64,000 bases of DNA from Octopus sinensis. Its lineage: Eukaryota. Of this stretch, positions 6,370 to 56,389 are shown in pieces. Below the pieces are notes generated by a model, which was given only the letters and a program-made list of their open reading frames with translations, searched no databases and was not told where the DNA came from. How positions within the stretch are numbered: the first letter of the stretch is position 1; every line of letters begins with the position of its first letter. The stretch spans positions 24,750,464 through 24,814,463 of the forward strand of contig NC_043011.1 of assembly GCF_006345805.1 (NCBI RefSeq), given 5' to 3'. Both the position numbers and the translations under genes were made by a program.

Positions 6370-6444
<75 letters not shown>

Positions 6445-6655
6445 AACACACACACATATATGTATGTATTTGTCTGTCTCTTATCACTTGACAATCGATG
6501 TTGGTGTGTTTACGTCCCTGTAACTTGGTGGTTCCGCAAAACAGACCCATAGAATAAGTATTAGGCTTACAAAGAATAAGTCATGGGGTCGATTTGTTTG
6601 ATTAAAGATGGTGCTCCAGCATGGCCACAGTCAAATGACAATACAAAAGAAAAAT
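6141..6655 (+). mobile_element. Tandem chimeric CORE-like SINE (tail - half head - microsatellite - tail)
   Basis: The tail is repeated at 6141-6304 and 6471-6655. The junction GTGCTCCAGC|TACTATAGCC joins tail to mid-head. Confidence 0.75.
6369..6470. repeat. Compound (CA)n(TA)n microsatellite inside a SINE
   Basis: Long pure TA run at ~6388-6442 flanked by CA runs. Confidence 0.95.
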
Positions 6656-20351: not shown

Positions 20352-20816
20352 GGTTTATGTTACAATGACACACGAGATGCTACAACCGGAAGTGACCTCC
20401 CAGTAAACAGCAGGAGTAGCAACCGCTAATGGAAGCGTCAGTATTACCAGTTGTCGTCACTAGGACAGATAATGATTTTTTTTTTCAAAGTAATTAGAAA
20501 AACACCAAATTAATTGAATTTTTTATGGAAATATTGCATAAAAAGATAAAATATGCTAAAAATTGCTAAAAAGCATTACTGAAAGAATCAGTGCTTCAAA
20601 TCACACTGTTACCAAACAAGACGAGATATTCTCGTGACGTCACCATGGCCTCGACTTTTCCAAAATTCCTACTGGGAATTTTGAAGCAGACGTACCTGTA
20701 AAAAGAAGTCATAATTACAGCAGAAGACAGAACTTGCTATACATGAGTATAATCTTCCATATCAGTTCACGTTTTCGGAATATTTACTCGCCACTCTCGC
20801 GGTCCGTTCAGCTATA
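20352..20816. promoter_or_regulatory. Shared bidirectional promoter/5'UTR interval between QDPR and KCMF1
   Basis: 465 bp between divergent ATGs, CpG-retaining in an AT-rich background. Contains ACCGGAAGTG (ETS/GABP-type, 20385-20394) and palindromic GTGACGTCAC (CRE, 20634-20643). Confidence 0.8.
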
Positions 20817-20832
20817 ATGTCTCGCCATGAGG
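20817..20832 (+). CDS. KCMF1: E3 ubiquitin ligase KCMF1, coding exon 1 (MSRHE-G)
   Basis: ATG TCT CGC CAT GAG G followed by a GTGAGT donor. MSRHEG is the conserved KCMF1 N-terminus and splices in phase 1 to 32404. Confidence 0.93.
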
Positions 20833-21903: not shown

Positions 21904-21934
<31 letters not shown>

Positions 21935-25970: not shown

Positions 25971-27398
25971 CAGAATTGATTAAAATATTTACATAGGCTC
26001 TGTAGCACAGGATAGCATTAAAACAAAAACACTGTTAACACACCAGAAATGTACCAAGAAAGTGTTATAAAAGCTAATTGGTTTATCCAGTTTACTTACC
26101 CGCTTTATAATAGTGGGTCTGTAAGCAATTTCCCTGGACAGTTAAAGAGGATACTCAGTTGTTGATGAAATCCCAATACAAAAATGAAACTGACAAATAT
26201 ATATTGTATATAGAGACAAGGTGTTTACATCTGTCTATTTATTACATATAGTGGTGGCAAAGCCGGTGTGCTGCTTATAGCACATATGTTGTGCAGAGAT
26301 AGTTGAACTGCCTCATTGTTTGTAGCAGCTGGCCTTCACTGAAAGGCAAGAGTGAAGTTGCTGGTGTTTCTTCTGTATAAATCCAGAGGAACAGTATTAA
26401 CTTGTTCATAATTAGCAGGTCTGTCCTCAAGAATAACTTTGTTTAGTGACTCCTCATTTATGTTATTTAAAATACCTTGCTAAAGGTTATTATGCTTAGT
26501 CCTTAATTCCATACTCTACAGCCATCTGGACCCCCCCCCCCTCATCCACATTTTTTTCTAAAATGAACCTGTAGAATTTAAAATTTAGCCTCAATCTGTC
26601 ACTACCTTTATGAGGGTCTGCTATAGCCCTTCAAGGATTAAATAATACAGGGTAAAGAAGTGGGGTCTTCACCTGGATTATCAGATTTTCGTTTGCAACA
26701 ATCAGTTCATTAGCATTTTATGGCATCTATTTTAAGTGTTAGTTAAAAGCACTCATACTGAATTAAAATTGGAGTTTCCTATTCTGTAAAGTTTACTACA
26801 TAGAATCTTTGCAGGATGAAAGGAACAATTGAAATTAGACCAGGTGTAAGACCAGATTTAAGATTTTCTAGAGTTAAAAAAATAAAAAAAATAAGCCACC
26901 CAATGTTTTAAAATTATCCAATGGAAAGTGTTGAAATATTTCTGTTTTCTGAAAACACAACCTGATCTTAAAGCCTAAATGTTTGCTCTATTTCTTAAGC
27001 TTCAAAACAAAATTAAGACAAAACGAATATTAGATAACACTATAGGTGGTATTTTTGGAAAATTCATCCCTATATGCATCTACCATGCAGTAAAGTGTGA
27101 ATTGTGTGTGTGTGTATATATGTATATATATACACACACTCACACAGTTTGGTTTAGAGGTCTCATTCTGTCTTTCATGTTTGTTCATTTATAACCCAGT
27201 AGTGTTTTGCTGTTGATGCCTCCAAATTGAACAATATTCTCAATAAGGCATTGAAATTGTGATGATTTTTTTGTCAATAACTGATGAGGGGTGAGCATGT
27301 TTATGTCCTTTGTGAGATTTTGGTGGAGTGGTTTCAGTATGTTCCTTCATTGTCCTCCTGTGCTATATCATATTCTCTGTGTGTAATATCTATCTATC

Positions 27399-27399
<1 letters not shown>

Positions 27400-27436
<37 letters not shown>
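27400..27436. repeat. (TA)n microsatellite
   Basis: Direct observation. Confidence 0.95.
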
Positions 27437-27441
<5 letters not shown>

Positions 27442-30142
27442 GAGATTACACACAGGTGCAGGTATAGGTGTGTGGTTAAGAAGTTTGCTTTGGCACTATG
27501 TGTTTATGGTTTCAGTCCCACGGTTTGGGTGCTGTCTACTGGTTTTCAATACTATGGCCACAAGTTGGGCAATATGTTGTCACTGAAATTAGTTAACAGA
27601 GTGAAAAAGCTCATCGTTTATATATATATATACACACACACACACATATATAAGGGATGGGATATATATGTTTATGTCAATGAATTCTTATTTCCCCTTG
27701 CCTTCATATGCATTGGTTGATTGTAAACAAAAGCATCACATTATACTGGTAGTATTGATTGCTTGCAGCTCACCACAAAAAAATTCTTGATGTGTTCTGC
27801 AATCTTTATAAACAAAATACACATTCCAACAGTGTCACTGTGTCCAGTTCTCTAGGTAACTATGTCTGGGCTGGTGAGTATTACTTTCTTTGGAAATAGA
27901 CGAGGGTTGGTATCAGAAAGGCACCCAACGGTAGAGAAATTCCTGTCCCACTGTAGTCTTGTCTGGTTCATGCAAGCATGAAAAAGTACCCTCTTTGTCC
28001 AGTACTTACTGACTTTAATTTTATTGTCAGATATTAAAAAATAATTGAATCTAGTTACAAAAATGTCTACACTCATATATATTACATATGTAGACATATA
28101 CATAGGTTTGGTAATGCAAACAGAAAAATATATAACTCGAATGTGAGTATATGTTTATTATTTGTAATTGGCAAACGTTAGAGAATAACTATAGGCCTGA
28201 GAGTTTTGAGAGTGTTGGCATTGCATGCGACTTTCTGCCTTTGAGTTACCTTGTAACTTCTGCCAATTATTGATAAAAAAAAATGTGTGTGTATGTCATC
28301 ATCCTTTGACAACTGTTTTCCATGCTGGTATGGGTTGGACAGTTCAACCAGAGCTGGCAAGCAGGAGAGCTGTGCCAGGTTCTTGTCTGATTTGCTTTCT
28401 AAAGTTCAGGGCTTGGTTTCTGCAGCTGGATGCTCTTCCTAATGCCAACCACTTTACTGGGTGCTTTTTACATGGCATAGGCACAAAGCTCTTGCAGACC
28501 AATCCTCTTCATAAGGGGAAGAGGCGTTAATGCTTTTGCTCTGGAGGATGAGTATTTGTACTAGGAAATGTATGCAGACAATTCTCTGTGTTACATAAAT
28601 AATGCATTCTTGAAAGTTTGGCTTATGGAATTTGATAATATGAAGCAATTTTTCCATTAAAGTTCTATAGTACCCTGAATTTTAGAAAGCCAATTGGAAA
28701 TTTCAAAAATAGGAAATGAAAAATGGATAGCTATTGGGTATTTCATAATTTTTTTCCATAAAACCATTACTCATTGATGCATGAGCACAAAAAGCAAGCC
28801 AGTCCCTAAATATACACAATTATTATCAATTTAATACAATGTTATTTCCCAGTGATTGAAGTTGACTAATATACTATAGATTTGTGAACTTTTTGAAGAA
28901 ATTAGGAACAATTATTTTTTAATAAGCAATTATAGAATTAGAGCCAATTAGTACTAAACAAAGAAAGCACTTTTACATGGTTATTTGCTAGAAATAACAG
29001 CCCTTCATCACACTAGCTATCATAATCTTATAATGCCTAAATTATCAATATTCATAAAATATTGGCAGATAAAAGCATGATTGAAAAAATTCTAATGACT
29101 GGGTATTTTCATTGCTGACATGCAATAATGTTGTTCAAACATAAATAATCCTTTGAGCTTATCCAAGCTTTCAATTTTTGTCATTTTCTTGTCATTAAAG
29201 CATAGTACTTGAAGCATCAAAAATTATTAGCCAGAGGTGTGATAGCTTTTTAAAAAGTAGGATAAAACAGGTTAGTCATAGTTGGTACGTTTTTAGTCAT
29301 AAATCTGCTGAATTCGGTTAAACAACATTAATGTTAATAAAATATTTAGTGGTGTTCTTGACAAACTACACTCCATATGTTACTAAGCTTAATTTTCCGT
29401 AGTATCTCTGAGGAAAGCAATAATTTGCTTAAATTTCAAAAACAATGAATTGCTTAATTTTATTTATATTTTGTCATTAAAAGATATTGATAATTGTTTT
29501 TATGAAACATGCTGAATTATAAGAGACTTATTCTGAAATATATCTACTTAAGAGTCGATTGCTTTAGAATGAAGAGAGTTTCTGGCTGAGTGCCAATCTA
29601 TATTGCAGGCTTTATAGCTTCTTCATACATGATAAAATAGATGTGTTAACTTACTGCAAAATTTCATGACAAATTATTGTGTTGGCAAGACGTTCCTTGT
29701 TTAAACTGCATTTATATTTGACATTAATAACCTGTTTTCCTTAAGTCGTAATTTAATAAATTATATTATACGTCTCCATCTATATATGGTACCTATGACA
29801 AGTTGCTTGTACTATATATAGAGTACAGCTACATGGTTCTGAATTGGTTTTGAATAGTCCCACTGTGTGATATCTTGGTCAAGTGTTTTCTACTATATCA
29901 TTGGATCAACCAATAACTTTTGAATGAATATGAAATCATAGATGGCCTGTGTGTGTGAGTGTGACACATTGACATCCTTTGCCTGGTGTTGCACTTGTTT
30001 ATGTCTCTTGTCGGCAATATCTGCCAAAGCTTTGCAGCTTCATCTAAAGGCCAGTGAAATAAAAATATTTTGCTCAAGAAACAAGGGTTGGTAGCAGGAT
30101 GGGACATCTGGCTGCAAAATGATGCTCAATAAGTATCTAAAC

Positions 30143-32403: not shown

Positions 32404-32571
32404 GTGTGAGCTGTGATTCCTGTTTGAAGGGCAACTTTCGTGGGAAAAGATACAAATGTCTTGTCTGCTATGATTATGATCTCTGTGCAAATTGTTATGA
32501 GGCAGGTGCCACCACAACCAGACATACTACAGATCACCCAGTCCAATGTATACTTACTAAGGCTGATTTTG
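32404..32571 (+). CDS. KCMF1: KCMF1 coding exon 2, ZZ-type zinc finger (VSCDSCLKGNFRGKRYKCLVCYDYDLCANCYEAGATTTRHTTDHPVQCILTKADF)
   Basis: TAG acceptor at 32401-32403, GTACTA donor at 32572, 168 nt. Has the ZZ cysteine/histidine pattern. Confidence 0.97.
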
Positions 32572-35500
32572 GTACTAATTTTTTTCTTTATATCTTTACC
32601 ATTGTTTATATCCTTGGATATATATGCATAATGTAATCAGTTAAGCAAATGTCAGATTAGTTTAGTATATAATTATCATGTATTCTTTTTCAGTTTAAAC
32701 TGGATTTATAATATCTTATGTTTTTGTATAATTACATTGAGCAAATTATTCTGTGCAGAATAGGTAAAACAACAATGGTAGGTACAGTCTTGACTGTGTG
32801 CTTAAGATGTTTGCTTTGTAACCAGGTGGTTTCAGGTTCAGGCCTACTGCTCACTCCTTGTCCTCTACTATAGCTTCAAGTTGACCAATGACATGTGAAC
32901 AAAATTTGGTACATGGAAAATGTATGGAAGCCTGCCATTTGTATTTGTCATCAGCATGTCATTACATGGAATTGTTCAGCTCATGGTAACAATGATTATG
33001 TCTTATATCAACAAAAGGTTTGGCAATTAATGTGAATTTAAGGAATAAATTACATTACTTGAAAATATGTAAGAGTTGATATCAGAACAGGCATGTGACC
33101 ATAGACCACTGATGCCAGTGTGGAGAAAGTAGACAAAATTAATGAAATAGTAATATTATTCAGTAATATAGAATTTGCATAAATCTGGTGTAATGGCAAC
33201 TTGTCATTAATGTTTTGTGTTTTTCTCTTCATAATCAAATTTTTTTAAAAAGTTTTAACAGTTTAAAGAAACAGTCTGTGAGAATTGCATATATATTTTT
33301 CCAACAATAATCTTTGTGTGCCAGTATCTCATACAAAGAAAAAGTACAAGTACACAATATATTTGTAGTCATATAAAAGTTGCCTAAAATGTCCTCACAT
33401 TTATCAGTTACCCTTTCCAATAACATTAGTTTCCTTAACTTTTCTTCAACCCATAACAATATTTTACACTCTTATTTAATCCATGTAGGATTCGGTGATG
33501 TCAAGGTCCAAATGTTAGTTACCTATAGGAAATTGAACTTGTCTTCGCTTTTTGTTTCAACAATTCTCAATTGTTTTATCTCTTTAAACTTATGAATCTT
33601 CTTTAAATTCTTACTGTTGTGTTGGTTCCTATTTTTGCTTCTGTTATAACAATTTCTGCTCCTCATCTCTTTTTCTACTATTATTTGTTTTCATCAAAAA
33701 TCTTTTACCAATGTACTAGCTTTCCTTTATAAAATGACATAATTATGAAACTGCTGATTTTTTTTTTCTCTCTTTGAAAATAATAATTGTATTGTCTTCA
33801 TTTGAATCTCCTATCGGCTAAGGATTTTATCTGCCCTCTCTCCTTGGAAAACAATATCAAAAAGAAAAATCTGTCAAGTTTGGGTTTGCGGTTTGGATTG
33901 TTTATTTTAGCATTGAGGTGAACAAGCCTATTAACTCCATTAATAGCGAATATTGGATCCGGTGTTTTTATCACAATTTAGTTCCAAATTTAACTTTAAT
34001 CATTTCGCTAACTTCTAAATTTGTTCATATTCTTTCCACTTGGCTTGTTAATAATAGAATTGTTTAAACAATTCTGCTGAGTAAGCATCCCTTTTATGAC
34101 CTGTGTTTGTAAGAGAACTTCCACTCAGCATTGCAGGATACTGAAAGACTCAATTATCTAGTGTCCCAGCTGCTGGCAATAGTTGTATTGTTACATAGTA
34201 TCTGTTTTTGCCTTGGTGGACTGGACCATTGAGTGCTAAGTGATTTTGCAATGGCCACTATGCATTAAATCATTTACTGGAAGTTGACTGCTAATTTTTT
34301 GGCTGGCATTAGAGAACCATTTCAACTCTCAGTAATCAAAGAATATGATTTAACCCAATCCAAAGTATCAGGCAGTAAATTAATAGAGTTAAACCATTAT
34401 ATGAAATGCTTTTCAGAATTTATTCCAGTTCCTTCCATTCTGAGTTCAAATCTACCAAGGTCTGCCTTGACTTTCATCATTTTGGGTCAATAAAATGCTA
34501 TTCTAGAGCAATGGGCTGGTAGAATTTTTAAAGCATTGGTTGAGATGCTTTTTAGTATTTGCCCTGGCTTTTTGCATTTTGAGTTCAAATCTCATCGTGG
34601 CTTACTTGGTGATAAACTTAATCTGTTATCCAGTTTATCACCACCACCTGGTCCTTAGTATCTCTAGTGGAGTCCACTTAGTTGCAAGCACTCAAATATG
34701 GGTCTCTGGTTTGAGGATACCTTCCCCATTCTCTCCCAGTTTCAGAGACTCTCAAATGATACATGAGCCCTGCCCTTACCTCCTGAATAAGTGATATAAA
34801 AAAAGAAGTGACCATCTATCTCAGTATCACAAAATTTTTCAATTTAAGCAATATAATTCATAGGTTATTGGATTGTTTACGATTCTGAACACAAAACTGT
34901 GCCAATTATATTCAGAACCTGCCAAAATGTCATTTTCCTTTTTGAGATTGTGAAAAATGCTTACATCTGAGCCTCTTGCAAAGAAAATCTCTTGTTTTGT
35001 ATTTTCAGTCTCTTAGTTTAATTGACTGACTTCCATTCCTGTAACATCATTCAGCTCCATCTAAACTATGTAACAACACATTTGTTGAAAGTCATTTTGT
35101 CACACACACCCACTCTCTCTCAGAATGTAAAAAGATCCTAATACATATATACATAAAGTGTGACCTCCTCAAAATCTTGACTAAATTCCATATTTTGTAA
35201 CCTATTTTTATCAAGATTAACAAATCTTAGAAAAACTTCATTATTAAAATGACATTACAAATCTTTCATTGTTCTTTAAATGAAAGCCTTTTTAATAGGT
35301 ATTAATTTGACATTAATCCCCCCCTCCCCTGTATTTATTTACAAAACATTAATCTTGCTTTTGACTTTCTATTTTTCACCAACCTCTGTTGTTGTATTTT
35401 GCTTTTATCCCTTTTAATCCAGATAATGAAGCTAGAGATTTTCGGCACCTCAACAGCTACTAACAAATAAAAAAGAAAAACTGTTCTTGGTTTGTGATTT

Positions 35501-40493: not shown

Positions 40494-40633
40494 AACTGTA
40501 TTATGGGGGAGAAGCATTGCCTGCCGAGCAGGCCCAGTCTTTCACTTGTCCATATTGTGGCAAAATGGGGTTTACAGAAGCAACTTTACAGGAGCATGTC
40601 ACATCAGAGCATGCAGACGCCTCTACAGAAGTA
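40494..40633 (+). CDS. KCMF1: KCMF1 coding exon 3, C2H2 (Di19-like) zinc finger (ELYYGGEALPAEQAQSFTCPYCGKMGFTEATLQEHVTSEHADASTEV)
   Basis: CAG acceptor at 40491-40493, GTTAGT donor at 40634, 140 nt. CPYC...H...H motif present. Confidence 0.97.
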
Positions 40634-41818
40634 GTTAGTATAATCTTTATTTTTCATTGAGTGTTTATTTTCCACATCTTTTTTTTTTTTCCCTCGTTAT
40701 TTTCATTTGTGTATTTCTTATTATGAAACAGGGAAACAATTTTTAATATGTCTAAAATTATTAGTTTGATATTTTGTCTATATTGTTTTTTCATATGTTA
40801 ATAAAAGAAACAGCATACTGTGTGATTAAGACATGGGATTATAGACTGCAAGTTTAAGAGTTTGAGTCTTTTTACAGTTACTGTATTGTAAAGTTATGCA
40901 GGTTATTGTAAAAAAAATTTTCGCCACAATTCATGTCCAAATTTACAACAAAATAAAAATTCTTGCCTTTTTGATGCTTATGAAAATATATTCAAACTAA
41001 AAAAAAATTTTTTTAATGTGGTAATTTACCAAATTTTGGAAAGCTAGCTATTTAGTTGAGGAAAACTATTATATTTAAATTTTGTTCGATACTTTGGATT
41101 TTTTTTTTCTAAGATTATTTTTTCAAAATTTGACAAAGGCATTCCAACAATTCATCATAAATTATAAAGAAATAGTTTCTGATACTTGGTATTTTATGAT
41201 AATTATGTGTGAATGTCTTTCAAGACAAAAATAGATATTTAATAAATCTTTACTATAAGAAGAGGATTAGGTAAGAAATATGAATAATATTGCTGTATTC
41301 TATACAGTGCATATAGAACATTTTTTTCTTATTTTCTTGATTGCTCGCTGGCAAGACTTGAGTCAACACGGTTTATATTGAAATTCTTCAGATCAGTCAC
41401 ATGTACGTATTGTTGGATATCCTGAAGGCTATCTGCTTTGAAACTAGGTACAATCTTCTGTCAACCTGTTCTCATGAAAATGCTGCAAGTGATGAAACAT
41501 CTTCTCCTGACATTTTCTTCAATATTGTACAAATCTAAAAGTCCTTCTAATCCTGGCAAGAACTTTCTGAGAATTTTGCAAAGCAAATCTTTTTATTCAT
41601 GGTACTCATTTTCAGAGAAACTATATTGTTGACATTAACAAACCTGGATTTCACTTACATAGATATAATTGCATTATAAGTGTTGCTCCATAAAAACCAA
41701 GGGTATCAACAGAAAACCACCATTTTTTGTTTGTTTGTTTTTTAGCTTCTTTTTATACATATCTTTACAATACATAGCTCAGATTTTATGTGTAAACATT
41801 GTCATTATTCTTTTTAAG

Positions 41819-41920
41819 GTTTGTCCAATATGTGCTGCATTGCCTGGTGGGGATCCTAACCATGTAACTGATGACTTTGCTGCACACCTCACATTAGAAC
41901 ACAGAACACCAAGGGAATTT
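41819..41920 (+). CDS. KCMF1: KCMF1 coding exon 4 (VCPICAALPGGDPNHVTDDFAAHLTLEHRTPREF)
   Basis: AAG acceptor at 41816-41818, 102 nt. Ends at the U12-type donor ATATCCTTTT (41921). Confidence 0.95.
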
Positions 41921-44535
41921 ATATCCTTTTCGTATTGTCCAGCTACTGCAAAAACATTTTTGGGATTTTTTTTTGTTCTGTATAACAAGTTTTTTAAACT
42001 TTTTCTAAAAGTAAAAACTCAGTTTAATTAACTGAAAAAATGGTTACATTTTTAATTTCTTTTTGAAATTCATTTTGAATTGTATCTTTTATTATCTCCA
42101 TAATCATGTTTTTTTTTCTGCTCACTTGACAACTTTGAAACGTATTTTTTTTAGCTGTCTTATATAAATTCACTTTCAGTTACATTCAATCACCAGCTCG
42201 AAACATTCCAACCTGAATACATCTCATCTCCCCTTCACATTCAAAAGATTACACTGAACAGCTTCTTATTTTCAGCTAGATGGCACTCAGTCTATCATTC
42301 ATTCATAATAAACTTCAAACATTCATAGTTTTATGACCTGTGTCCACTCCTATTAGCAAAGAATCTTTACTAAGTTTCTTTCAAACAATACTGATTTTAG
42401 TTTACTCTACTTGTTAGCTCCATTCTTGACTCTAATTTCAATACTTTGCTAATAATACCTATCCCCTTATTCTAATGTTAGTGTCAAACTCTGCTACAAA
42501 CTAGCATTTCTTATAGCTTTGAGATGTTGATAATGTGATTGTTTATTTTTAGAATGACAGTATAGGTAACTGTGAGATGCCAGATCTGGCCAGTTTGAAC
42601 ATAAAGCAAGTACAATATTTGAGCCAGTTTAAATGCTAAATGGTTAAATTGCTATCAGTTATCAATTGTGTGGCCTGTTAAATGACTAAGGCTATCCCCA
42701 GATTTGGTGCTCTCTATATACTGTGCATCTGTTTTGTTGAAGACCAAACTATACACTTCAGTTTGCAGTATTACCTGGTCTGTTTTTGTGTCCTTGTGTC
42801 AGCTTTTGCCCACCTCTACTAAGGCCACCACTAAAAGCTACAATCATCATTTATTGTCCATGTTCCTTGCTAGCATGGGTTTGATGATTTGACAGGATCT
42901 TAGGGGTCCAAGTACTGCTTTGGCATGCTTTCTACAGCTGATTGCATTTCCTAACTCCAACCACTTTACTGAGCCTCTTTTCATGCCACCAGTAGTAGTT
43001 GTCACCATGCAGCTTGCAAGACTACAAATCCCAGTGGAAGCAGGAAGTGTGGACAGTTTTATACTAAGAGATAGGGGTGTGGGTGAAGAGCAGGTCCTTC
43101 TTGTAAAAGAGCTACATAGTTATTGACATTTAGGTGGAGTTGGAAGTAAACTAGCAGGTGCATGAGCCAGATGAAACTTTGTTGAAGCTAGATGCTCTGT
43201 CTCTTACCAGCCCTCACCAGTTTCCAAGTAAAGTAATATTTCCCCTCGTCCTTTCAAACAGTGAACAGCTCAGTAGTTGGATGATGGTAACTTTCATTTA
43301 CAATTAATGCATCCATGTCAGGACAACAGGAAACTTACCTTCACTCATTCCTCAGACACTATCATCATTATCATTTAATGTTCATTTACCGACACTACAA
43401 CAAGCTCTCATGTTAGCTTTGGTGTGGTCTCTAACTGATTACTCTTCCTAACACCAAATCTAACATATATACAAACAATGAGTTTCTTTTAGTTTCCATC
43501 AACCAGATAACTCTCACAAGACTCCAGTCAACAGTGTCCATGTAGCTCCTAAGCAAATTTCTTAACCATATGGCCATGCCTGCACCACTATGTGTGTCCG
43601 AGTGTTTGTTTTCCTGTATTGTCTCACCTTTGCAGTTATGTCCTTCATAAACAAAATCTTGCAGCCAAGTAATCCGACATGCAAAGAAGGGCCAGTTAAA
43701 TAAAAAGTACCTTACTTGAAAAACATGTAAAGGTTGGCAACAAGAACATCTTAGCATAGAATTCTACCAAAAAATCTCAGCATTTAATGTTGACTCTTGA
43801 TTGAGCAGACTAGTATTGAAAAGTTTGCCAGCCAGTACCAGCTTAAATTTTATTTCAAACAGTGTCAGTGTGTAGCTAGGACTCCAAGCTTTTAGAGGGT
43901 GATTTGATGTAAGTTCAACATCTATATTTAACCATTTGAATGACAACATAAAGGCTCTCTCTCTCATTGGTTCTGATGTTGATTATATTTTGTGTTACTG
44001 GCAGTTATTTACCTTCATGTCATCCCTGATTGAGCAGACATATGATCAAAGGTATTCTGGCTGTGCTGACTGCATTCTTTGCATGTTGAATCTGTGCTCA
44101 AACAATATATTAGTGAAGACATACAAGCACACACATGCAGATACTGATGATGTGTTTTCACGTTCCTGTCTACTAAATCCACTCAACACCCTGATCAACC
44201 AAAGATTAAAATACACACCTGCCCACAGTGCCATGAAATAGAACCAAAGCAGGAACCACTTGTTTACAGATTAAACAGATATGGCTGTTGGTGATTGCAC
44301 ATCTGAATGCTACAAAGCATAATTCTATGTTATTTGTTGGAAAATGGTTCCACCAACTGTTTTGGGGTTTTTTTTTATGTGCATTGTGATGATGATATTA
44401 TTTACTTTCTAACTGTGGTTGCTAGGTGTGTGGAGCAGAAATTGATGTCTAAAGGAAAATTATTGTTGTCACACCATCAGTTCTGCTCTGATGGTGTGAC
44501 CATCTTGTCTTTTTTTTTTTTTTTTTCGATCTATC

Positions 44536-44574
<39 letters not shown>

Positions 44575-45783
44575 TATATATATCATCATCATCGTTTGGC
44601 GTCCGTTTTCCATGCTAGCATGGGTTGGATATATATATATGCATGCCTACTACATTACATCATGTGTAACAGGCGAAGTAAATGGCCACGTAGAAGCTTT
44701 TTTGTTGGCTGTTTTTGGTGCTGTTACGTGATGCAAAATGTGAGCAATATTGGACTGTCCTATAGCAGATTGTGAACAATTATGTTGTTGATTAGATATT
44801 TAATGGGCCCTTCACTTGTTCATTGCATTGGTTTTTCTGTGTAGTGTTTAAGTGAGTTTTGATTGATTGTGTTTGGTACTGGAATACTTGTAGCTTTTTG
44901 ATATTAATAGTGTCTATTTTGTGTAATTATTTGAATTTGTTCATGCTTGGTGTTCATCTGCAGGTTTTCACACGGTTATTCACTGTTGATGTTATTTAGC
45001 CCTAGCCCGTTCTTGATCAGTTAGACCTATGATCAAAGATGCTGTCCAATTGCAACTATTTATTTCTGTTTCTTTCAACATATTTTATCTACAACCACAT
45101 AACTAGTGTGTCCTTCCTTTTTTCCCTTTTTAAGGCAGTTGGTCTAAAGAAAGCTGTTATTTATAGCAGGTTTGGTAACCATCTAGAGTCTCTTGGTTAT
45201 TGTATTGTCTTCTGCAGTTGACTGACTTCCCTCTTGTGGCGTTTGCATTGTTAACGTTCATTGATAAAGTATTAATTGCTTTTTTCATTCACATTCCTTG
45301 CGTTACTCACATTGATGTCAAGATAAAATACAAGTTTATACCATCACACATTAACTACTTAAGAAGAACATAAACCATTATTTCTTCAGAAAATGCATTA
45401 TTGCCAGGAATGTAACCAAATGCACCAACAGTGGCAATATGCATGCATATTGTTTGAAAATAAAACACAGATTTATCTAATATTCGTTTCAAATTTTGGC
45501 TCACGGTCAGCAAGTTTTAGGGAGGGGTTAAGTTAACATCAACCCAGTTCAACTGGTACTTATTTTATTGACCTCAAAGGAATGAAAGGCAAAGTCCATC
45601 TTGGCAGAATTTGAACTCAGAACATTAAGGCAGACAAAATGTCAGATTTCTACCAGCTTGCCACCTTAAGGTTCATCTACTATTAAAATGTCTGGTTTCT
45701 TTCTTTTAAAAAAATCATCTCCAAAATTTGTTATATTTCTTGTACTCCTTCTTGGATGTATTTGTCCTTAACTTTTTTCTTAC
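41921..45783 (+). other. KCMF1: U12-type (minor spliceosome) AT-AC intron, KCMF1 intron 4, 3863 bp
   Basis: 5' site ATATCCTTTT, branch consensus TCCTTAAC ending 11 nt before the 3' end, terminal AC. Removing the intron joins ...TPREF to EESSGMRHVRR in frame. Confidence 0.93.
42510..42647 (+). mobile_element. Same TTAA MITE family, partial copy inside the U12 intron
   Basis: GTGATTGTTTATTTTTAGAATGAC...CCAGTTTAAATGCTAAATGG-TTAA. Confidence 0.65.
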
Positions 45784-45943
45784 GAAGAGTCAAGTGGAAT
45801 GAGGCATGTAAGACGAATACCTCATCCAGCACGGGGTGTTGGAAGCACTCGTTCTAGGAGAGCTAACATGCATATACCACCTGGAGGATCTACTTTATCA
45901 GGGCTTTCACCTAATGGCAGAGAATCAATGGATCCTATAGCAG
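45784..45943 (+). CDS. KCMF1: KCMF1 coding exon 5 (EESSGMRHVRRIPHPARGVGSTRSRRANMHIPPGGSTLSGLSPNGRESMDPIA-E)
   Basis: Preceded by TCCTTAAC (45765-45772) and TAC (45781-45783); GTTTGT donor at 45944; 160 nt. RHVRR..HP.RG and RE.MDPIA match KCMF1. Absent from the supplied ORF track. Confidence 0.93.
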
Positions 45944-48900
45944 GTTTGTTACATTTTTAAAAAAAAATTTCCTTTGTTTGGATTTACTTTTATTTGTTTT
46001 TGGTTCATATCTTTTACACGATTTACTTTTCCTTTTACTTCACCTTTTTTTTCGTTTTTCAATTAACATTTTATTATTTTCAAAAGATATTGTTTTTGTG
46101 TGTACTGTGAATTATTAAAACTCTTTTCTAGTTAAAATGAATTTTCAAAAAAATACAGTATTGTTGGGTCCAGTAAAAATTTAGCCTGCTTTAAAAAAAT
46201 ATTTCCATTCTGTATTTTGAAGGTTAAAAGATATTGGTTATAGAAAATAATGATATATCAATCTAATATGTAATTTTCGTTGTTCAGTAGTAAGAAATGA
46301 TTAAGCTTCTAGGTTTATTAGTATCAGTACTTTCATAGGTCTAGACATAATTTTTAATGTTTCCCAGTTATAATTATTATACATTAACAGTTTACTTTAC
46401 GTAAAAAGAATGATACTATTTCAGAAGCATTAGAACAATGGAGCTATAATTAATTTTTTAATTGTTATTTGTTATTTTTTTAAAAATATATTCAGTTTTT
46501 ATGTTTAAATTTGTTTTGTTATATATTATAATGTATATTATTTATTGTATTATATCATAGTTTTCTATAGCATTTCTTCTCACGCAGTGGCTTTTTTATA
46601 TTTATTTTTTTGTCAATTTAAATTTTATGTATTTTAATTTTAGTTTTGAGCTTTAGCTTCAGGGATCTACTTTTTAAAGTAGAATTAATAGTATGGTTCA
46701 TTTAAATAGTAATCCTCAGTATGCTTTATTTATTTGGATTATATAATCAACTGTAATATGATACTTTTTTTCCTACTTATACTGGACAAAATTCTTCAAG
46801 TTCTCAGTTGGGGCGGCAGTTAAATTTAGTTTGAGGTTTGGTTCTTAACTCTATTACTAATTCATACCACACATATCTCTATACCATTTTTTTTTTCTTT
46901 TTTTGCAACTTTCAATGCTTCACTAGCTAACTGAATACTCCTGGTTGCATTTATTATAATATATGGCTATGTATGCCATGAACATGAATTAGCTAGATTG
47001 GGGCAAAATATTTTTTCATAAAAATGAAGAAAAACGCTACTAAGATGCTCTTATACATTTTTGTTTGTTATTATTTACATTTTATAAGCTATAACTTACT
47101 AATCACTATTTGGAAATTATTACATGAAATGTCAGAATTGTTGTTTTTGTTAGTCACTATCATCTTTGTCATTCACCTTTTAGGATGGCAAATTTATGGC
47201 TTTGTCTGCTTCTTTACTGAATTATATATATTAAAGAGATATTAAGTTTGAACATACACATGTTAGCTTTTGATTAGACTAAAGAATTAAATTTAAGACT
47301 ATCGAGTTTTCATGTTTTTAGTAATATATCTATTATATGCTGTGTATTTTTGTTTGAAACTAGCAATTCTGTGTGATAAATGTTTATAAAACCTTTGAGG
47401 AATAGAGGCGAAGAATTAAGATATGTAAGGTGATGTAATGTCAGTGAACGAAAACAAAGATAAGGATGTTGTATTGCATTGCATAGGTTGTTATTTTGGG
47501 GATAAATCCCCCTTTTCAAATAATAGATTTTTAAAAAAATGAAAGTAATGAGTTTGAAGAAATTTATTATTGACAAACCATCACAGTCTGAGACAGTTTG
47601 CCAATAGCAGTAAATTTCGCTGAACTCTGATTATTTTCTTTTATTTGAAAGGGAAAATTCGTCCCTAAAGATACAATTATTAAGCAACCACTGTAATACA
47701 ATATCTATTTTTGTTTTAATTCATTTACGTCATTATACATGTTTGAAGTTCTTGCCTGCATTGCTCAAAGGTTTTAAAAACATCACATTTTTATTTACTG
47801 CAGTGCTTCAAGCAAATTACAATACTTTATTTACCAAATCTGAAGATTTGTTTTTTAATTTATGCATCTAATGCTTAATCAAATTTTCAAACATAATTGC
47901 ACCTTAGAACCAATTTTCATGTCTTAGCAGTTGCTTTCATGATTTAAACTGAATTAATTTTGGATTGCTTCTACTGCTGCTGCAAGTCATAGGTCTTGAT
48001 ATGAGACAGTTGTGATGGTAGGATGACAAGATGCATTTTTATTGGTTGTATATGAGAGTTGTAGCTTGTAGTGTTGCTTTAACCAACTCTTCTGTGCCTG
48101 CATTCACCTTACATTTAAGCAGTTTGTTTTCTGATAGTCTTCAGATGCCTTACTTACATGTACACATTGAATTCAGATCCAATATTTCTAATGTAGTGTT
48201 TCAAAACCAGCTACCACATTGTGCATAGATCTGTGTTTTGACAATTCATGTAAGAAACAAAAGTTATAAAAATACTTTTTTCTAATCAATTGTATGTACA
48301 TAGAAATACAGCACCTGAAAATGATCAAAAAATAGACTGCTTGAAGTGTGGGTAGACACACGGGAGTTGAGAGTAAAATATGCATTTTCTTAGTAGAAAG
48401 ATTTCTTTAAATGCAAACATTAGAAAGATTTGTTGAGGTTTCTCTTTTACACTTGAATGCCCTTCTCAGCATGAATAACACTCAGCTATGTGTGTGGAAA
48501 ATTAATCCTCATTTTTAGTTAGACTGATCTTGAAAAAAAATGTACCTTGGCCAAAGTCAGAACAATGTCTACGGTGAAGTCTGAACATGAGTTTTTTGTT
48601 TTGTTTTTATATTTAAGTAGTGCTCTATGCTATGTGTTGGACAGGTCATTATGGTCCGTGTCAGTTTTCATTTACTTTAATAGAGAATACTGGTTATCCT
48701 TGACAGCAAATGCATTTTATCATGTTGTCAGTGCTGGAAATGGAAATATTTTGTGAGAGAAGGACACTGTTATTCGAAGATATTACCCTTCTAGGTGGGT
48801 AATGTGATGCAGCTGTGAAATTGATATATACTATTATCTATTAGGAGTTACTCTCTTCTTAGCTTTACCATTATCTGTCTTGCAAAATAACTTATTCTCA

Positions 48901-49721: not shown

Positions 49722-52604
49722 TTTCTATATAGCGTCCTAAACTGAGTTTGAACTAAGAATCTTTATTTCTACTTGTTGGGTGTTAAAGAATACTTAGCCA
49801 CATAATGTAGCAGGGGAATACTTAGGCAAAATTTTGAATATTTGACAAATGCACAAAAGATGAAATTAATGGTCTGTCAAATTTAAGCTCTATAAATTGC
49901 AAACTTTACAAGAAAAAAGGAACCCATTTTAATTGATCTGTGTTGTTGAACTCTTGAGATTTGCTTTAGTGATCAGCTAGAATTTCTAAAGTTCTGATCA
50001 TATGAAAGCTTATTGTTGAAGCAGATGTGATTGAATAATTGAATAATACTCAGTCATTAAAAGGCAAAAAAGAGAATGATAGTTTATTTCCATTTTTCAT
50101 GTTGCCATGGGTTGGACAGATCATCGGTGTCTCTCAGTTTTTTTCCAGAGTTGCTGCCTGAGAGCTACACCTCATTTGTATGTGCCATTTTGGCATGGTT
50201 TCTATAGCAAGATGCCTTTCACAAAGTGTACTGGGTGCATTTTATTATAGCACCAGTGCTAGAGAAGTTGCCTTGTCCAAGGCAAGATAAAGAGGTCCTC
50301 TCTATTCTATATAGTCTCCAAGAAACAAGAAGTTACATTCTAACAGTTCTATTGTTTAATTTCCTTATATTCAGTTATAAACAATAATTATAATAATCTT
50401 TACCATTACATCAAAAGTGATATTTGAAAAGATTCTAAAATGTCAATGTTTACATTTTTTATGAATCTTGGTGCATCTTTCTTAGCACAAATCCACAAGA
50501 TTGGTGCCACAATTGTCATCCTGAAACTTTATATTTAGCTTTGTTGAGGCCCACATTTAAAAACAGCAAAAGTGATCCTATATCTGATATTATCAAATGT
50601 CACATGTATTGTTGAAAGATATGAAGTTATGGAGACTAACTAGAAACTTTGCATGGAGTAATAGTTATTAGAAAAAATATGAATGTATATGATTATTAAC
50701 TGGGTGGAAGATTGGTGTTATTTTGTATTTACTAGTTGGCTCTCAAAAATTATTTTTCTTTCACAATAATCCCAGTTAAAAAATAGAATTCTAGATCTCT
50801 TGGCATAATCCAGTGTAAGGAATCAATGGTGGGGAATTATCTAATGTCATATAGTTGATCTTTGCTCTGATTTTAATTGATCCTATGTGAAACCTTTTTG
50901 TCATCAGCCTTACTTTCCACTGTACCCCTTTGCTTGTTAATCACTCCTTATAATAACCCTATCTCTGCCTCTCTCCACTGAGACCATGGGATACTGTTTA
51001 ACAACCCTCACTCTAGATAATAGATTTGCTCAAGTCAAACATCCTGAGCCCCAGTAGTTGATTGTACTTATCAGGACTTTCAACTTCAAGTTTGAATCTA
51101 TAAAATGAAGGATTATCATAACCAAAACTACCCTCTGGTTGCTACATTACTAAGAATGAAACAAGGAAGTAACTTCTACGTTTGGTTAGTGTTCAGTGTT
51201 TGCAAGACCCAAGTCAGTTCATCAACACAAAGAAATGTGTTGATGTGCCATAAGAGGAAATGTTTTATGTTTTTAGCAGGTCATCTGACTGATGAAGTGT
51301 ACTTCCCAAAATATTTGATATTTTTTTTCTCTTCAGAGAGTGTTTTTAAGCAGTTACTTGACCTACTAGAATCCCATTCTACTGTCTTAAAAAGGTTGTA
51401 CACACTGGATAGTGTCATCCTAGATTGTTTTTAATTGCTGTAGGCAGGAAGAAGAGCACACCTGTGTTCTTTGTATGGAGGGAGGATGTTACACCTCAGA
51501 TTGCTGCAAGAGGAAGATGCATCACGTTATCCTCCTCTGACAGGAAACCTGATCTGAATGCTTGCGACTGAGTGGATTCACTAACGGATCAAATGTTTAA
51601 CTTGGGTTAGATGTCACCTAAGAACAGGTACAGTCCATCTAATGACTTTCCACATGGTTTCTGTTTGCTTGATTTCAATTAAAAGACTTGGATCAGCTTA
51701 TGGCTATTGTAGAAGACACCTAAAAGATCAAATCCCTAACCATCTGATTGTGAAGCAAACTTCTTAAACCACAACCTGAAAAAATGCTATGGTTATTGGT
51801 GGAGCATCTTTGATCATAGGTCTTTTTAATCAACAGCCAATATGGTGCTAAATATTTTCGTATTTCTCAGTAGAATGACTTGTTGCTCAAACAGTCCACT
51901 TTGATGATACAATATAATTTGAGTGAGATTTCGCTGCTACTTCTAATAGGCCAAGTAACAACAAAGAGACTTCTTAATTGTCACTATATGAAGTCCAAGT
52001 TATCTTTATAAGTTATCCAGTCAAAAGATCAATGATCTTTAGGTTAGAAAAGTGTTTTGATTCTCAAAGAAAAAAAAACATTGTTATTGTCCACTTGACA
52101 CATATAAGAAATGTGAATGATAAAGATTATGATTATGTTGAAGCTATATACCACAGTGCCTTTTATGAGTTAGTCAAGGGAGATGGGGTGGTGCCTATGA
52201 CATTTGAAGAAGCTGTCGAAAGTGAGGATCTCTTGGATTATCTTTATTCTGTGGGCCTTGTCTGAATGCCAAAGGCACCCAAAGACCTGATGATTTGTAT
52301 GAAGTTGAGCAGTAGATTAAGTCTACTACAAAACTGTGACAGATTGCTTCAGTTTCTGTTCTACCCTATTTCACTCTGTCGTAGGTCATCATGATGCTTT
52401 AATAGAAAGAACTTCTGCAGAACAAGATCAAACCTGAAACCATGTGATTGCAAAGCCAACTTCTTTACCACCTGGCCATTTTTGCACACATTCTAAATAT
52501 TTAATCTTTGAAATTTTCTACATTTCATTATACATATGTTATGATTAGAGTGTTACCTGTCATATGATGGATAATATCTGGAAATAGTGTGTATGTATAT
52601 ATAT

Positions 52605-52800
52605 ATCATCATCATCATTTAGCGTCCGCTTTCCATGCTAGCATGGGTTGGACGGGTCAACTGGGGTCTGTGAAGCTGGAAGGCTTCGTCAGGCCCAGTC
52701 AGATCTGGCAGTGTTTCTACGGCTGGATGCCCTTCCTAACGCCAACCACTCCGCGAGTGTAGTGGGTGTTTTTTACATGCCACCAGCACAGGTGCCAGAC
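52605..52800 (-). mobile_element. Young Meta-domain-like SINE (CpGs intact)
   Basis: On +: TCATCATCATTTAGCGTCCGCTTTCCATGCTAGCATGGGTTGGACG...GGCTGGATGCCCTTCCTAACGCCAACCAC. Confidence 0.85.
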
Positions 52801-53601: not shown

Positions 53602-53603
53602 CA

Positions 53604-53670
<67 letters not shown>

Positions 53671-55096: not shown

Positions 55097-56389
55097 TTGG
55101 GTCATCCCATAACTAATGTGGCTTTTTTTATACAAATTTGGTTTTTTCAAAATTAAGATTTTGTTATTAAGTTTTTAAGTTAAAAAATTAAGTTTTTCTT
55201 TTAAATCTAAAATATACCCTCCTTCATTTTCTACAATGCTTTTCCATCTATCTGGTAGACCTGCAAAGCCCCTCTTCCAAAATTTTCTTGTCCATGACAA
55301 AAAATACTCCTCAAGCACTGTTCTGACCTCATCTACAGAATTCATATATTTTCCATCCAAATGATTTTGAAGATTGCAGAATAAATGATAATCAGATGGG
55401 ACAATGCCCAGTGAATATGGTGGGTGGGGCATCATTTCCCATTCAAACTACTCTAGCCTTTGGAATGTCATCCTCACTGTATGTGGCTGAGCATTATCCT
55501 GCTGGAAGAATACCTTTTGTCTTAAAACCAAAGATGGTCTATTTTCTTCTAGTGCTGACTTAAGCCACTCAAGCTGCTTGCAGTAGACCTCCTTTGTTAT
55601 TGTTTGGTTTGGGTGTAAAAGTTCAAAGTGGATTAAACCTTTCATATCCCACCAAACAAATAATAACACCTTACGTGGGTGAAGGCCTTTAGCCTAGGGT
55701 GCTGGTGTTTCTCCTTTCCCTATCTACTGTCTTTGGTACTTGACAGTTTTATAGAGAACCCGTTTCTCATCACCAGTTACTATTTGGTCCAAAAAGGTTC
55801 ATTTGTGAGACATGACAACAAAGAAGAGCACACATTAACTCTCTGCACATGATTAGACTTGGGAAGTTTGTGAGAAACACATTGACCCAATTGTTGACTT
55901 TTCTAATGGCATACAGGTGTTGATGAATGGTTGAATGACCAAATCCAAGCTTCTCTGCTAGTTCCTCAACAGTTACAATGGGATTTTGTGCTACCAGGAT
56001 TTGCAGGACGTCCTCGTCAAGCTCTACAGATCTTCTAGGTTGTAGTTTCCAGCTCGGAATTTCAGGAACCATTGTTGATACTGGCTTACGCTTATTATCC
56101 GATCCCCATATACTGCATTAATGTTTCTCTCACTTTCTGTTTTGTTATCATCTTTACTGAACTCATAAAGCAAAATATGCCGAATATGCTCCTTTGTCAC
56201 TTCCATTATAGCTTTGAAAAAATAACTGTTAAAATCGAACTGCATTCTTCAAAACTTGCACTAAGAATAAGAGCAAGGTAAAATTACTACCTGACTTCAT
56301 AGCAAGTTGATGCAGGTAGTTTATCCCATCCCCCTCTGACTTTTAGTTCATGCAATTGAAAAAACTGCATTATTTATGGGGTGACCCAA
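55097..56389 (-). mobile_element. Mariner element copy B, full length (1293 bp), decayed, in KCMF1 intron 5
   Basis: ~31-bp TIRs (TTGGGTCATCCCATAACTAATGTGGC / revcomp TTGGGTCACCCCATAAATAATGCAG) with TA on both sides. Motifs IVTGDEK, FVWWD, QQDNA and HPPYSLGIVPSDY are present, with 34 residues between D2 and D3. The frame is broken. Confidence 0.95.

What the first reader, a model, noticed from the sequence alone, without database searches (positions are those of the whole stretch)
41921..45783. Minor-spliceosome (U12) AT-AC intron in KCMF1
Seen directly: exon 4 ends at ATATCCTTTT rather than GT. A TCCTTAAC branch box at 45765-45772 and a terminal AC at 45782-45783 precede exon 5. Splicing at these sites restores a KCMF1-like reading (TPREF|EESSGMRHVRR). 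Established: RTATCCTT, TCCTTAAC and a short branch-to-acceptor distance define U11/U12 introns, and AT-AC introns are the rarer subtype. From memory, not verified here: vertebrate KCMF1 and Drosophila CG11984 carry a U12 intron at this position. If so, this is an ancient intron retained in a cephalopod that has grown to 3.9 kb with several TE insertions. GT-AG-only predictors would mis-model it.
Basis: partly seen in the sequence, partly recalled or inferred. Interest (0 to 1): 0.75.

Follow-up and report, generated by a model that had tools for sequence, protein, structure and literature searches.

The report
Known U12 AT-AC intron, octopus KCMF1

Summary
The intron 41921-45783 starts with ATATCCTTT, has TCCTTAAC at 45765-45772 (branch A 12 nt from the end) and ends in AC. 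Joining 41920 to 45784 gives ...TPREF|EESSGMRHVRR. The four coding exons I joined from the window (exons 2-5, 190 aa) are 100% identical to RefSeq "KCMF1-like isoform X3 [Octopus vulgaris]", which carries this junction.

The same phase-0 position holds an AT-AC-type intron in two cephalopod-like relatives, a limpet, a pufferfish, a bird (AT-AT there) and an insect-like contig. In one relative only the first ~10 and last ~23 intron bases still align. A sponge has a GT-AG intron at this position.

About 115 ORF-called homologues read through the exon end into ISF or VSF, which is (A/G)TATCCTTT translated. Lin et al. 2010 list Drosophila CG11984 intron 3 as AT-AC U12, with an orthologous U12 intron in human KCMF1.

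Roughly 15% of the intron is interspersed repeat or microsatellite, so growth by TE insertion is only partly shown. Many gene models mis-handle this intron.

Verdict: correct interpretation, already known, low interest. Side find: insects and myriapods carry an exonised copy of the U12 donor (ISFL) in KCMF1.

The parts
20817..20832 (+). Coding end of KCMF1 exon 1 (ATG TCT CGC CAT GAG G = MSRHE+G), followed by the U2-type donor GTGAGT
   Evidence: Pattern search gave a single hit against 0.04 expected. Sequence read. It matches the MSRHEG N-terminus of the homologues.
32404..32571 (+). Exon 2 (ZZ zinc finger), flanked by AG and GT
   Evidence: tblastn; sequence; boundaries.
40494..40633 (+). 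Exon 3 (first half of zf-Di19), with GT-AG introns on both sides
41819..41920 (+). Exon 4, 34 codons (VCPICAALPGG...HRTPREF), phase 0 at both ends
   Evidence: zf-Di19 E=1.6e-5, 25.5 bits, just under Pfam's 27.5-bit gathering cut-off.
41921..45783 (+). U12-type AT-AC intron (intron 4), 3863 nt, phase 0
   Evidence: Orthologous AT-AC introns. The junction is present in the RefSeq O. vulgaris isoform X3 protein.
41921..41929 (+). U12 5' splice site ATATCCTTT, a perfect match to the /ATATCCTT consensus
   Evidence: It is conserved in L001, L005-7, L008, L013, L016 and L017. It reads as 'ISF' in 79+30 read-through ORFs.
45765..45772 (+). U12 branch-point box TCCTTAAC; branch A at 45770/45771, 12-13 nt from the 3' junction
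   Evidence: Conserved as TCCTTAAC, TCCTTAAT, TTCTTAAC or CCCTTAAC at the same distance in the orthologues.
45782..45783 (+). 3' terminal AC
   Evidence: AC is also the terminus in L001, L002, L005, L013, L016 and L017.
45784..45943 (+). Exon 5 (EESSGMRHVRR...MDPIA+G), followed by the donor GTTTGT. Exon 6 is not in the window.
   Evidence: Searches for exon 6 were negative.
41864..41869 (+). Alternative U2-type donor GTAACT inside exon 4, as used by RefSeq isoform X1
   Evidence: My enumeration of in-frame GT/GC-AG pairs reproduces the P0254 junction GGDPNH|SSGMRH.
45788..45789 (+). Alternative AG acceptor 6 nt inside exon 5, paired with the donor at 41864. The pair deletes 21 aa.
   Evidence: 555 aa versus 534 aa.
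42504..42651 (.). Interspersed repeat fragment; three other copies in the window (70-81% identity)
   Evidence: blastn of the intron against the rest of the window.
42843..42988 (.). Interspersed repeat fragments (42843-42900 and 42914-42988); seven or more partial copies elsewhere in the window
44523..44644 (.). (TA)26 microsatellite (44532-44583) plus an adjoining repeat tail of the same family as 42843-42900
45475..45644 (.). SINE-sized (~170 nt) interspersed repeat, seven copies elsewhere in the window (73-80% identity). It ends 120 nt before the branch box.
   Evidence: No tRNA-like head was found by ARAGORN.

Best explanation
Window 41921-45783 is intron 4 of the octopus KCMF1 gene, which encodes an E3 ubiquitin ligase with ZZ and zf-Di19 zinc fingers. 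It is a U12-dependent (minor-spliceosome) intron of the AT-AC subtype.

Shown here: it has a perfect ATATCCTTT donor, a perfect TCCTTAAC branch box 12 nt from the 3' end, a terminal AC and phase 0. Removing it restores the conserved KCMF1 reading frame. It is orthologous to the AT-AC U12 intron already described in Drosophila CG11984 and human KCMF1.

Inferred from established knowledge of the pathway: the U11/U12 di-snRNP binds the donor (U11) and the branch box (U12, bulging the branch A) together. U4atac/U6atac.U5 then joins, U6atac replaces U11 on ATATCC, and two transesterifications join 41920 to 45784.

The interior of the intron is unconstrained. It has expanded in octopus to 3.9 kb, against 108-2509 nt in the other taxa sampled, partly through interspersed repeats. 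A flanking weak GT-AG pair (41864/45789) gives a minority or aberrant product lacking 21 aa.
For: Sequence at the sites. Exon boundaries fixed independently by tblastn with KCMF1 homologues.

The joined peptide is contiguous in properly spliced homologues: 104 proteins have the x|DE junction. It is 100% identical to RefSeq O. vulgaris KCMF1-like isoform X3, which contains PREF|EESSG. The other four introns of the gene in the window are ordinary GT-AG.

Orthologous introns at the identical position and phase:
- L001: 581 nt, ATATCCTTT...TCCTTAAT...TTAC
- L005-7: 952 nt
- Lottia L016: 335 nt
- Takifugu L017: 108 nt
- bird L008: 2509 nt, AT-AT
- insect-like L013: 165 nt

Between the window and L005 only exons plus the first ~10 and last ~23 intron bases align; the interior does not. 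That is the signature of selection on the U12 signals. In L005 the codons after the AC differ from the window's mainly at third positions (GAA GAG TCA versus GAG GAA CCA), so they are coding.

All 115 ORF fragments that run through the exon-4 end read ISF or VSF.

Literature: CG11984 intron 3 is AT-AC U12 and its human KCMF1 orthologue is U12 (PMC2831892). CG11984/Kcmf1 is treated as a classical U12-intron gene in PMC2952598 and PMC7644725. Molluscs are relatively rich in minor introns, and Octopus sinensis was surveyed (PMC10639083). Most mollusc orthologues of human minor introns are minor (PMC11347168).
Against: The RefSeq X3 protein is a predicted model. No U11, U12, U4atac or U6atac gene lies in the window, so the presence of the machinery in this genome rests on the literature. 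RefSeq also lists an isoform X1 that uses a GT-AG pair instead. The intron is phase 0, the phase least favoured among U12 introns.
Confidence: 0.95

Rival explanations
1. The real, dominant splice uses the major (U2) spliceosome at GT-AG sites: donor GTAACT at 41864 and acceptor AG at 45788-45789, as in RefSeq isoform X1. On this reading the AT-AC match is incidental.
For: P0254 (O. vulgaris isoform X1, 534 aa) has the junction GGDPNH|SSGMRH. That is exactly this pair among the 22 in-frame GT/GC-AG combinations I enumerated. The TCCTTAAC box also fits a U2 branch consensus, and a T-run precedes the AG.
Against: The pair deletes 21 residues (VTDDFAAHLTLEHRTPREFEE), including the HLTLEH histidines of the zf-Di19 finger. 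These residues are nearly invariant across animals. The donor lacks G at -1 and at +5. None of the 104 spliced homologues from other species shows this junction. This reading cannot explain why ATATCCTTT and TCCTTAAC are conserved at the exact boundaries while the intron interior is scrambled.
Confidence: 0.03
2. The signals are a relic. The intron has U12-like sequence but is now removed by the major spliceosome, or is mostly retained. Retention would give a truncated protein ending ...PREFISFSYCPATAK... with a stop at 42029-42031.
For: In flies lacking U12 or U6atac, the Kcmf1 U12 intron was still partly spliced (PMC7644725). A Pan paniscus RefSeq isoform X2 ends ...PRDLISF, which is intron retention or read-through. 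The window ORF 41669-42031 reads through the donor.
Against: AT-AC termini with a perfect U11/U6atac and U12 match are very poor U2 substrates (established knowledge). The signals are kept under selection in several cephalopod-like relatives. Molluscs retain many minor introns.
Confidence: 0.02

Closest known systems
Human KCMF1 U12-type AT-AC intron (U12DB; Lin et al. 2010, PMC2831892)
   Same: Same gene, same codon position (after ...HRAPRDL / ...HRTPREF, before DESSG / EESSG), phase 0. The same ATATCCTTT donor is seen as 'DLISF' in the Pan and human-like read-through isoforms. It is classified as U12 AT-AC.
   Different: I could not read the human genomic sequence here. Takifugu (108 nt, AT-AC) and a bird (2509 nt, AT-AT) stand in for vertebrates. 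The octopus intron is longer (3863 nt) and carries octopus-specific repeats.
Drosophila melanogaster CG11984 (Kcmf1) intron 3, a classical AT-AC U12 intron
   Same: It is an orthologous intron according to the protein alignment in Lin et al. 2010. It belongs to a gene used as a U12-intron reporter in U6atac and U12 mutants.
   Different: In insects four extra codons (ISFL/IAFL) precede the donor, so the splice site lies 12 nt further downstream in the alignment (L013; dipteran Phlebotomus P0177). The insect introns are short (165 nt in L013).
RefSeq model 'E3 ubiquitin-protein ligase KCMF1-like isoform X3 [Octopus vulgaris]' (P0216)
   Same: Residues 6-195 are identical to the window's exons 2-5 and contain the AT-AC junction PREF|EESSG.
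   Different: It is a protein record only; I could not retrieve its locus. A sister isoform X1 uses a GT-AG pair.
Archetypal AT-AC introns (e.g. P120/NOP2 intron F, SCN4A/SCN5A, CDK5) defined by Hall and Padgett 1994 and Tarn and Steitz 1996
   Same: /ATATCCTT donor, TCCTTAAC branch box 10-15 nt from the 3' end, terminal AC (from my own knowledge and the introduction of PMC10639083).
   Different: Different genes. This one is phase 0 and unusually long for an invertebrate U12 intron.

Membership tests
U12-type (minor-spliceosome) intron, AT-AC subtype | 5' splice site /ATATCCTT (RTATCCTT) starting at intron position +1 | tested here: met
   41921-41929 = ATATCCTTT, a 9/9 match, on the first base after the homology-defined exon end.
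U12-type (minor-spliceosome) intron, AT-AC subtype | Branch-point box TCCTTAAC (TCCTTRAY) close to the 3' end (about 10-20 nt) | tested here: met
   45765-45772 = TCCTTAAC, an 8/8 match. The branch A at 45771 is 12 nt from the last intron base.
U12-type (minor-spliceosome) intron, AT-AC subtype | Terminal dinucleotides AT...AC, with the reading frame restored on removal | tested here: met
   AT at 41921-22 and AC at 45782-83. The joined peptide is contiguous in homologues and identical to the RefSeq octopus protein.
U12-type (minor-spliceosome) intron, AT-AC subtype | Orthology to an intron already classified as U12 in other species | tested here: met
   Same position and phase, with U12 signals, in L001, L005-7, L008, L013, L016 and L017. 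Fly and human are classified as U12 in PMC2831892.
U12-type (minor-spliceosome) intron, AT-AC subtype | Signals kept under purifying selection while the intron interior drifts | tested here: met
   Window versus L005: the alignment covers 41786-41930 and 45761-45945 only. No interior match at E<1e-3.
U12-type (minor-spliceosome) intron, AT-AC subtype | Junction actually used in mRNA | tested here: inconclusive
   The junction is in a RefSeq predicted protein (P0216). I had no access to reads, and no octopus transcript contig was recovered.
U12-type (minor-spliceosome) intron, AT-AC subtype | Splicing depends on the U11, U12, U4atac and U6atac snRNPs | not testable with these tools
   This needs knock-down or in-vitro splicing. 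Only fly data exist for the orthologue.
U12-type (minor-spliceosome) intron, AT-AC subtype | Host genome encodes the minor snRNAs | not testable with these tools
   The Rfam scan of the 64-kb window found nothing and the rest of the genome is not available. The literature surveys Octopus sinensis and reports molluscs as relatively minor-intron rich.
KCMF1 (E3 ubiquitin ligase, ZZ + zf-Di19) | ZZ zinc finger followed by a Di19-type zinc-binding domain; N-terminus MSRHEGVSCD | tested here: met
   Exon 4 plus exon 5 hits PF05605 just under Pfam's cut-off (25.5 versus 27.5 bits). PF00569 and PF05605 are precomputed on all the close homologues. The window sequence is 100% identical to octopus KCMF1-like. 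MSRHEG is at 20817.

The most novel reading that the evidence does not exclude
In octopus the U12 intron is nested inside a competing U2-type GT-AG pair (41864/45789; RefSeq isoform X1). If so, minor-spliceosome activity would act as a switch between full-length KCMF1 and an in-frame variant lacking the zinc-binding histidines of the Di19 finger. This would be a regulated U12/U2 competition, not splicing noise. The 3.9-kb repeat-laden intron would then serve as a slow, rate-limiting step.
Probability: 0.1. Interest if true: 0.35.

Novelty: already known. Interest (0 to 1): 0.12.

Why it matters
It matters little beyond annotation quality. The KCMF1 AT-AC intron is among the few U12 introns retained even in Drosophila. 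Its presence in a mollusc fits the published picture that molluscs keep most of the minor introns they share with humans.

It is useful as a positive control:
- A genome annotation pipeline should recover the junction 41920^45784. Many public models of this gene in other species do not.
- It is a handy reporter intron for minor-spliceosome activity in cephalopods.

The one potentially new observation lies outside the window: the exonised ISFL copy of the U12 donor in insects and myriapods.

Tried and rejected
(1) Chance. The motifs occur at chance frequency in the window, so motif counting alone proves nothing. Chance is rejected because of the exact positional coincidence and the conservation across species.

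(2) Canonical alternatives. I enumerated all in-frame, stop-free GT/GC-AG pairs near the boundaries (22 pairs). Every one deletes conserved residues or inserts unconserved ones. One corresponds to RefSeq isoform X1. Another (41932/45794, giving ...PREFISFSGMRH) is the kind of error seen in the Capitella model.

(3) Minor snRNA genes in the window: none (Rfam at gathering thresholds). tRNA-derived SINE heads: none.

(4) TE proteins inside the intron: the three longest intron ORFs have no Pfam match.

(5) Exon 6 (ELLSQLS...): not found up to base 64000, so the gene runs off the window.

(6) Identifying the Logan samples by accession in the literature: no hits.

(7) Fetching the O. vulgaris locus via P0216 and a bat locus via P0045: not on record.

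(8) Supplementary tables of Larue and Roy 2023, for octopus counts: not held.

(9) The first two protein searches returned only proteins up to about 1.75 times the query length. That hid the full-length octopus protein until I used a longer query, made of the window's exons plus the C-terminus of P0101.
Full report
**Observation**

I read both ends of the claimed intron and checked them by script.
- Exon 4 (41819-41920, 34 codons, preceded by ...TTTTTAAG) ends ...ACA CCA AGG GAA TTT.
- The next nine bases (41921-41929) are ATATCCTTT.
- TCCTTAAC is at 45765-45772 and AC at 45782-45783.
- Exon 5 starts at 45784 (GAA GAG TCA AGT GGA ATG AGG...) and ends at 45943 before GTTTGT.

**Is it more than chance?**

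As bare motifs, no. ATATCCTTT occurs once in the window against 1.37 expected from shuffles. TCCTTAAC occurs three times against 2.24 expected. A second ATATCCTT lies in intron 2 (32608-32615).

The significance is positional. Exon ends were fixed independently by tblastn with KCMF1 homologues. The 9-mer starts on the very next base, and the 8-mer places its branch A 12 nt before the homology-fixed start of exon 5. From the window's composition (33% G+C), I estimate the joint probability at fixed positions as about 1e-8 to 1e-9.

**Gene and organism**

The window holds the 5' part of one plus-strand gene:
- ATG at 20817 (MSRHE, donor GTGAGT)
- exon 2, 32404-32571 (ZZ finger)
- exon 3, 40494-40633
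- exon 4, 41819-41920
- exon 5, 45784-45943

Introns 1, 2, 3 and 5 begin with GT, and introns 1-3 end in AG (intron 5 runs off the window); only intron 4 is AT-AC. Exon 6 is beyond base 64000.

The 190 residues encoded by exons 2-5 are 100% identical to residues 6-195 of RefSeq [quoted passage not shown] (P0216). The source is therefore an octopus of that group. The AT-AC junction PREF|EESSG is already present in the public annotation.

**Comparative evidence**

I retrieved orthologous loci. At the identical codon position and phase 0 they show:

| Locus | Intron length | 5' end | 3' end |
|---|---|---|---|
| Window | 3863 nt | ATATCCTTTT | TGTCCTTAACTTTTTTCTTAC |
| L001, cephalopod-like | 581 nt | ATATCCTTTG | TTTCCTTAATTCTTCTTAC |
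| L005-7, cephalopod-like | 951-952 nt | ATATCCTTTT | TTTCCTTAACTCTTTCTTAC |
| Lottia gigantea (L016) | 335 nt | ATATCCTTTT | ATCCTTAACTTTGTTTCAC |
| Takifugu flavidus (L017) | 108 nt | ATATCCTTCC | GTCCTTAACGCGCCGCCATCAC |
| Ammospiza nelsoni, bird (L008) | 2509 nt | ATATCCTTTC | TTTTCTTAACTGCTTGATTAT (AT-AT) |
| Insect-like contig (L013) | 165 nt | ATATCCTTTT | TCCCTTAACCGCATATATAC |
| Corticium candelabrum, sponge (L015) | 1304 nt | GTAAGG | ACGTAG (ordinary U2 type) |

A closer relative of the window's octopus (L002-4, about 81% identical over 3.7 kb) keeps TCCTTAAC...CTCAC|.

Between the window and L005, blastn aligns only the exons plus the first ~10 and the last ~23 bases of the intron (41786-41930 and 45761-45945). 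Nothing in the interior aligns. This is the footprint of selection on the U11/U6atac and U12 binding sites. The codons just after the AC differ between the window and L005 mainly at third positions (GAA GAG TCA against GAG GAA CCA), so they are coding, not intronic.

**A population-scale check**

The 332 homologous proteins returned by the three searches include many prokaryote-style ORF calls on eukaryotic contigs. They sort as follows:
- 104 are properly spliced at x|DE.
- 79 run through the exon end into ISF (ATA TCC TTT).
- 6 run into VSF (GTA TCC TTT, the GT-AG subtype, for example a shrimp).
- 30 read ISFL-ISF.

None that runs through the boundary reads anything else.

**Literature**

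- Lin et al. 2010 (PMC2831892, Table 2) list CG11984, termini AT-AC, intron 3 of 6, as U12 in fly and U12 in human KCMF1. Orthology was judged by protein alignment.
- Pessa et al. 2010 (PMC2952598) and Li et al. 2020 (PMC7644725) treat CG11984/Kcmf1 as a classical U12-intron gene.
- Larue and Roy 2023 (PMC10639083) surveyed more than 3000 genomes, including Octopus sinensis. They note relative minor-intron enrichment in molluscs and that about 26% of human minor introns are AT-AC.
- Olthof et al. 2024 (PMC11347168) state that most mollusc orthologues of human minor introns are minor.

**Mechanism**

Shown here: the sequence signals, their conservation and the restored frame.

Inferred from the established minor-splicing pathway: U11 pairs with ATATCC and U12 with TCCTTAAC, as a di-snRNP. 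U4atac/U6atac.U5 then enters, U6atac takes over the donor, and the branch A (45770/45771) attacks 41921. Finally 41920 is ligated to 45784.

No RNA data and no snRNA genes were available to me (the Rfam scan of the window was empty). Dependence on the minor spliceosome is therefore inferred, at about 0.95 confidence.

**Alternatives**

I enumerated all in-frame GT/GC-AG pairs near the boundaries. One of them, donor GTAACT at 41864 with the AG at 45788-45789, reproduces RefSeq isoform X1 exactly (P0254: GGDPNH|SSGMRH, 21 aa shorter). It removes the HLTLEH zinc ligands and the most conserved stretch of the protein. It has a weak donor and appears in no other species' spliced product. I read it as cryptic U2 splicing or a model artefact. 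The remaining pairs are worse.

**Intron size and repeats**

The octopus intron is the longest of those sampled. Blastn of the intron against the rest of the window and TRF find the following:
- interspersed-repeat fragments at 42504-42651, 42843-42900, 42914-42988, 44555-44644 and 45475-45644, each with 3-7 copies elsewhere at 70-93% identity
- a (TA)26 microsatellite at 44532-44583

Together these cover about 573 nt, or 15% of the intron. No intron ORF has a Pfam domain and ARAGORN finds no tRNA-like SINE head. "Several TE insertions" is thus plausible but only partly demonstrated. Most of the extra length is unexplained with a 64-kb reference.

**Mis-modelling**

The prediction that GT-AG-biased gene finders fail on this intron is borne out widely:
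- Capitella: ...PRDFISFSIRHARR
- Lottia: intron partly translated
- Ammospiza P0002: HRALLDYDESSG
- Also Lampetra, Lycaon, Pseudorca, Aldrovandia, Dreissena, Patella, Batillaria, Candidula, Chionoecetes and Strigamia

For O. vulgaris, RefSeq X3 is correct.

**Side observation, outside the window**

In insects (beetles, Lepidoptera, Orthoptera, termite, Hemiptera, a sand fly), in centipedes and in Tara-metagenome crustacean-like contigs, mature KCMF1 has four extra residues, ISF[L/V/A], exactly at the intron position (RDL-ISFL-DEPxG). ISFL is what the U12 donor ATATCCTTTCTN translates to.
- In L013 these codons have drifted to ATC TCA TTT CTG, and a consensus ATATCCTTTTC donor follows immediately.
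- In L009 and L010-12 the ISFL codons remain but the intron is gone.
- Decapods, chelicerates, molluscs, annelids and vertebrates lack ISFL.

The simplest reading is a 12-nt tandem duplication, or downstream shift, of a U12 donor, with the upstream copy fixed as coding sequence. The literature searches I ran did not mention this, but the check was shallow.

**Verdict**

The feature is an already known, already annotated, deeply conserved U12 AT-AC intron. Interest is low (0.12).

Noticed in passing
Not in the window: L013 3419-3445, L009 ~1770-1790, L010 ~1690-1710; proteins P0107, P0114, P0123, P0252, P0279, P0291 and others: Insect, myriapod and some crustacean-like KCMF1 proteins carry four extra residues, ISF[L/V/A], exactly at the U12 intron position. 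These are the translation of the U12 donor ATATCCTTTCTN. In L013 the codons have drifted (ATC TCA TTT CTG) and a consensus AT-AC donor follows 12 nt downstream. In L009 and L010 the codons remain but the intron is lost. It looks like an exonised duplicate of a minor-intron 5' splice site.
   Followed up: partly
window 41864-41869 and 45788-45789: RefSeq O. vulgaris KCMF1-like isoform X1 (P0254) corresponds to a GT-AG pair that brackets the U12 sites. It deletes 21 aa, including the Di19 zinc-ligand histidines. It could be cryptic U2 splicing competing with the minor spliceosome, or a model artefact.
   Followed up: partly
L015 3560-4863 (Corticium candelabrum, sponge): The same phase-0 intron position in a sponge KCMF1-like gene holds an ordinary U2-type intron (GTAAGG...ACGTAG, 1304 nt). 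So the position predates Bilateria, but its U12 status there is either converted or not ancestral.
   Followed up: partly
L008 9599-12107 (Ammospiza nelsoni, bird): The orthologous bird intron has a perfect ATATCCTTT donor and a TTCTTAAC box but ends in AT, not AC (AT-AT termini). The deposited 121-aa model P0002 mis-splices it (HRALLDYDESSG).
   Followed up: no
window 55175-56245, minus strand: A degenerate mariner/Mos1-type transposase lies in intron 5 of KCMF1. It is broken into at least four ORF pieces (HTH_48 E=3.6e-18; Transposase_1 E=2.9e-16).
   Followed up: partly
window 32608-32615: A second ATATCCTT lies 37 nt downstream of the exon 2 GT donor, in frame with exon 2 and with no intervening stop. 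This is consistent with chance (about 1-3 expected per window), and no partner branch box was sought.
   Followed up: no
window 20635-20642: A perfect CRE palindrome, TGACGTCA, lies about 175 nt upstream of the KCMF1 ATG, in the only locally G+C-richer stretch (about 0.40). It may be a promoter element.
   Followed up: no
window 6388-6446, 21904-21933, 27386-27446, 44532-44583, 53603-53670: Recurrent (TA)n microsatellites, often next to the same ~60-nt repeat tail (e.g. 44569-44629 and 52592-52652, 93% identical). This suggests a SINE-like family with a TA-rich end.
   Followed up: no
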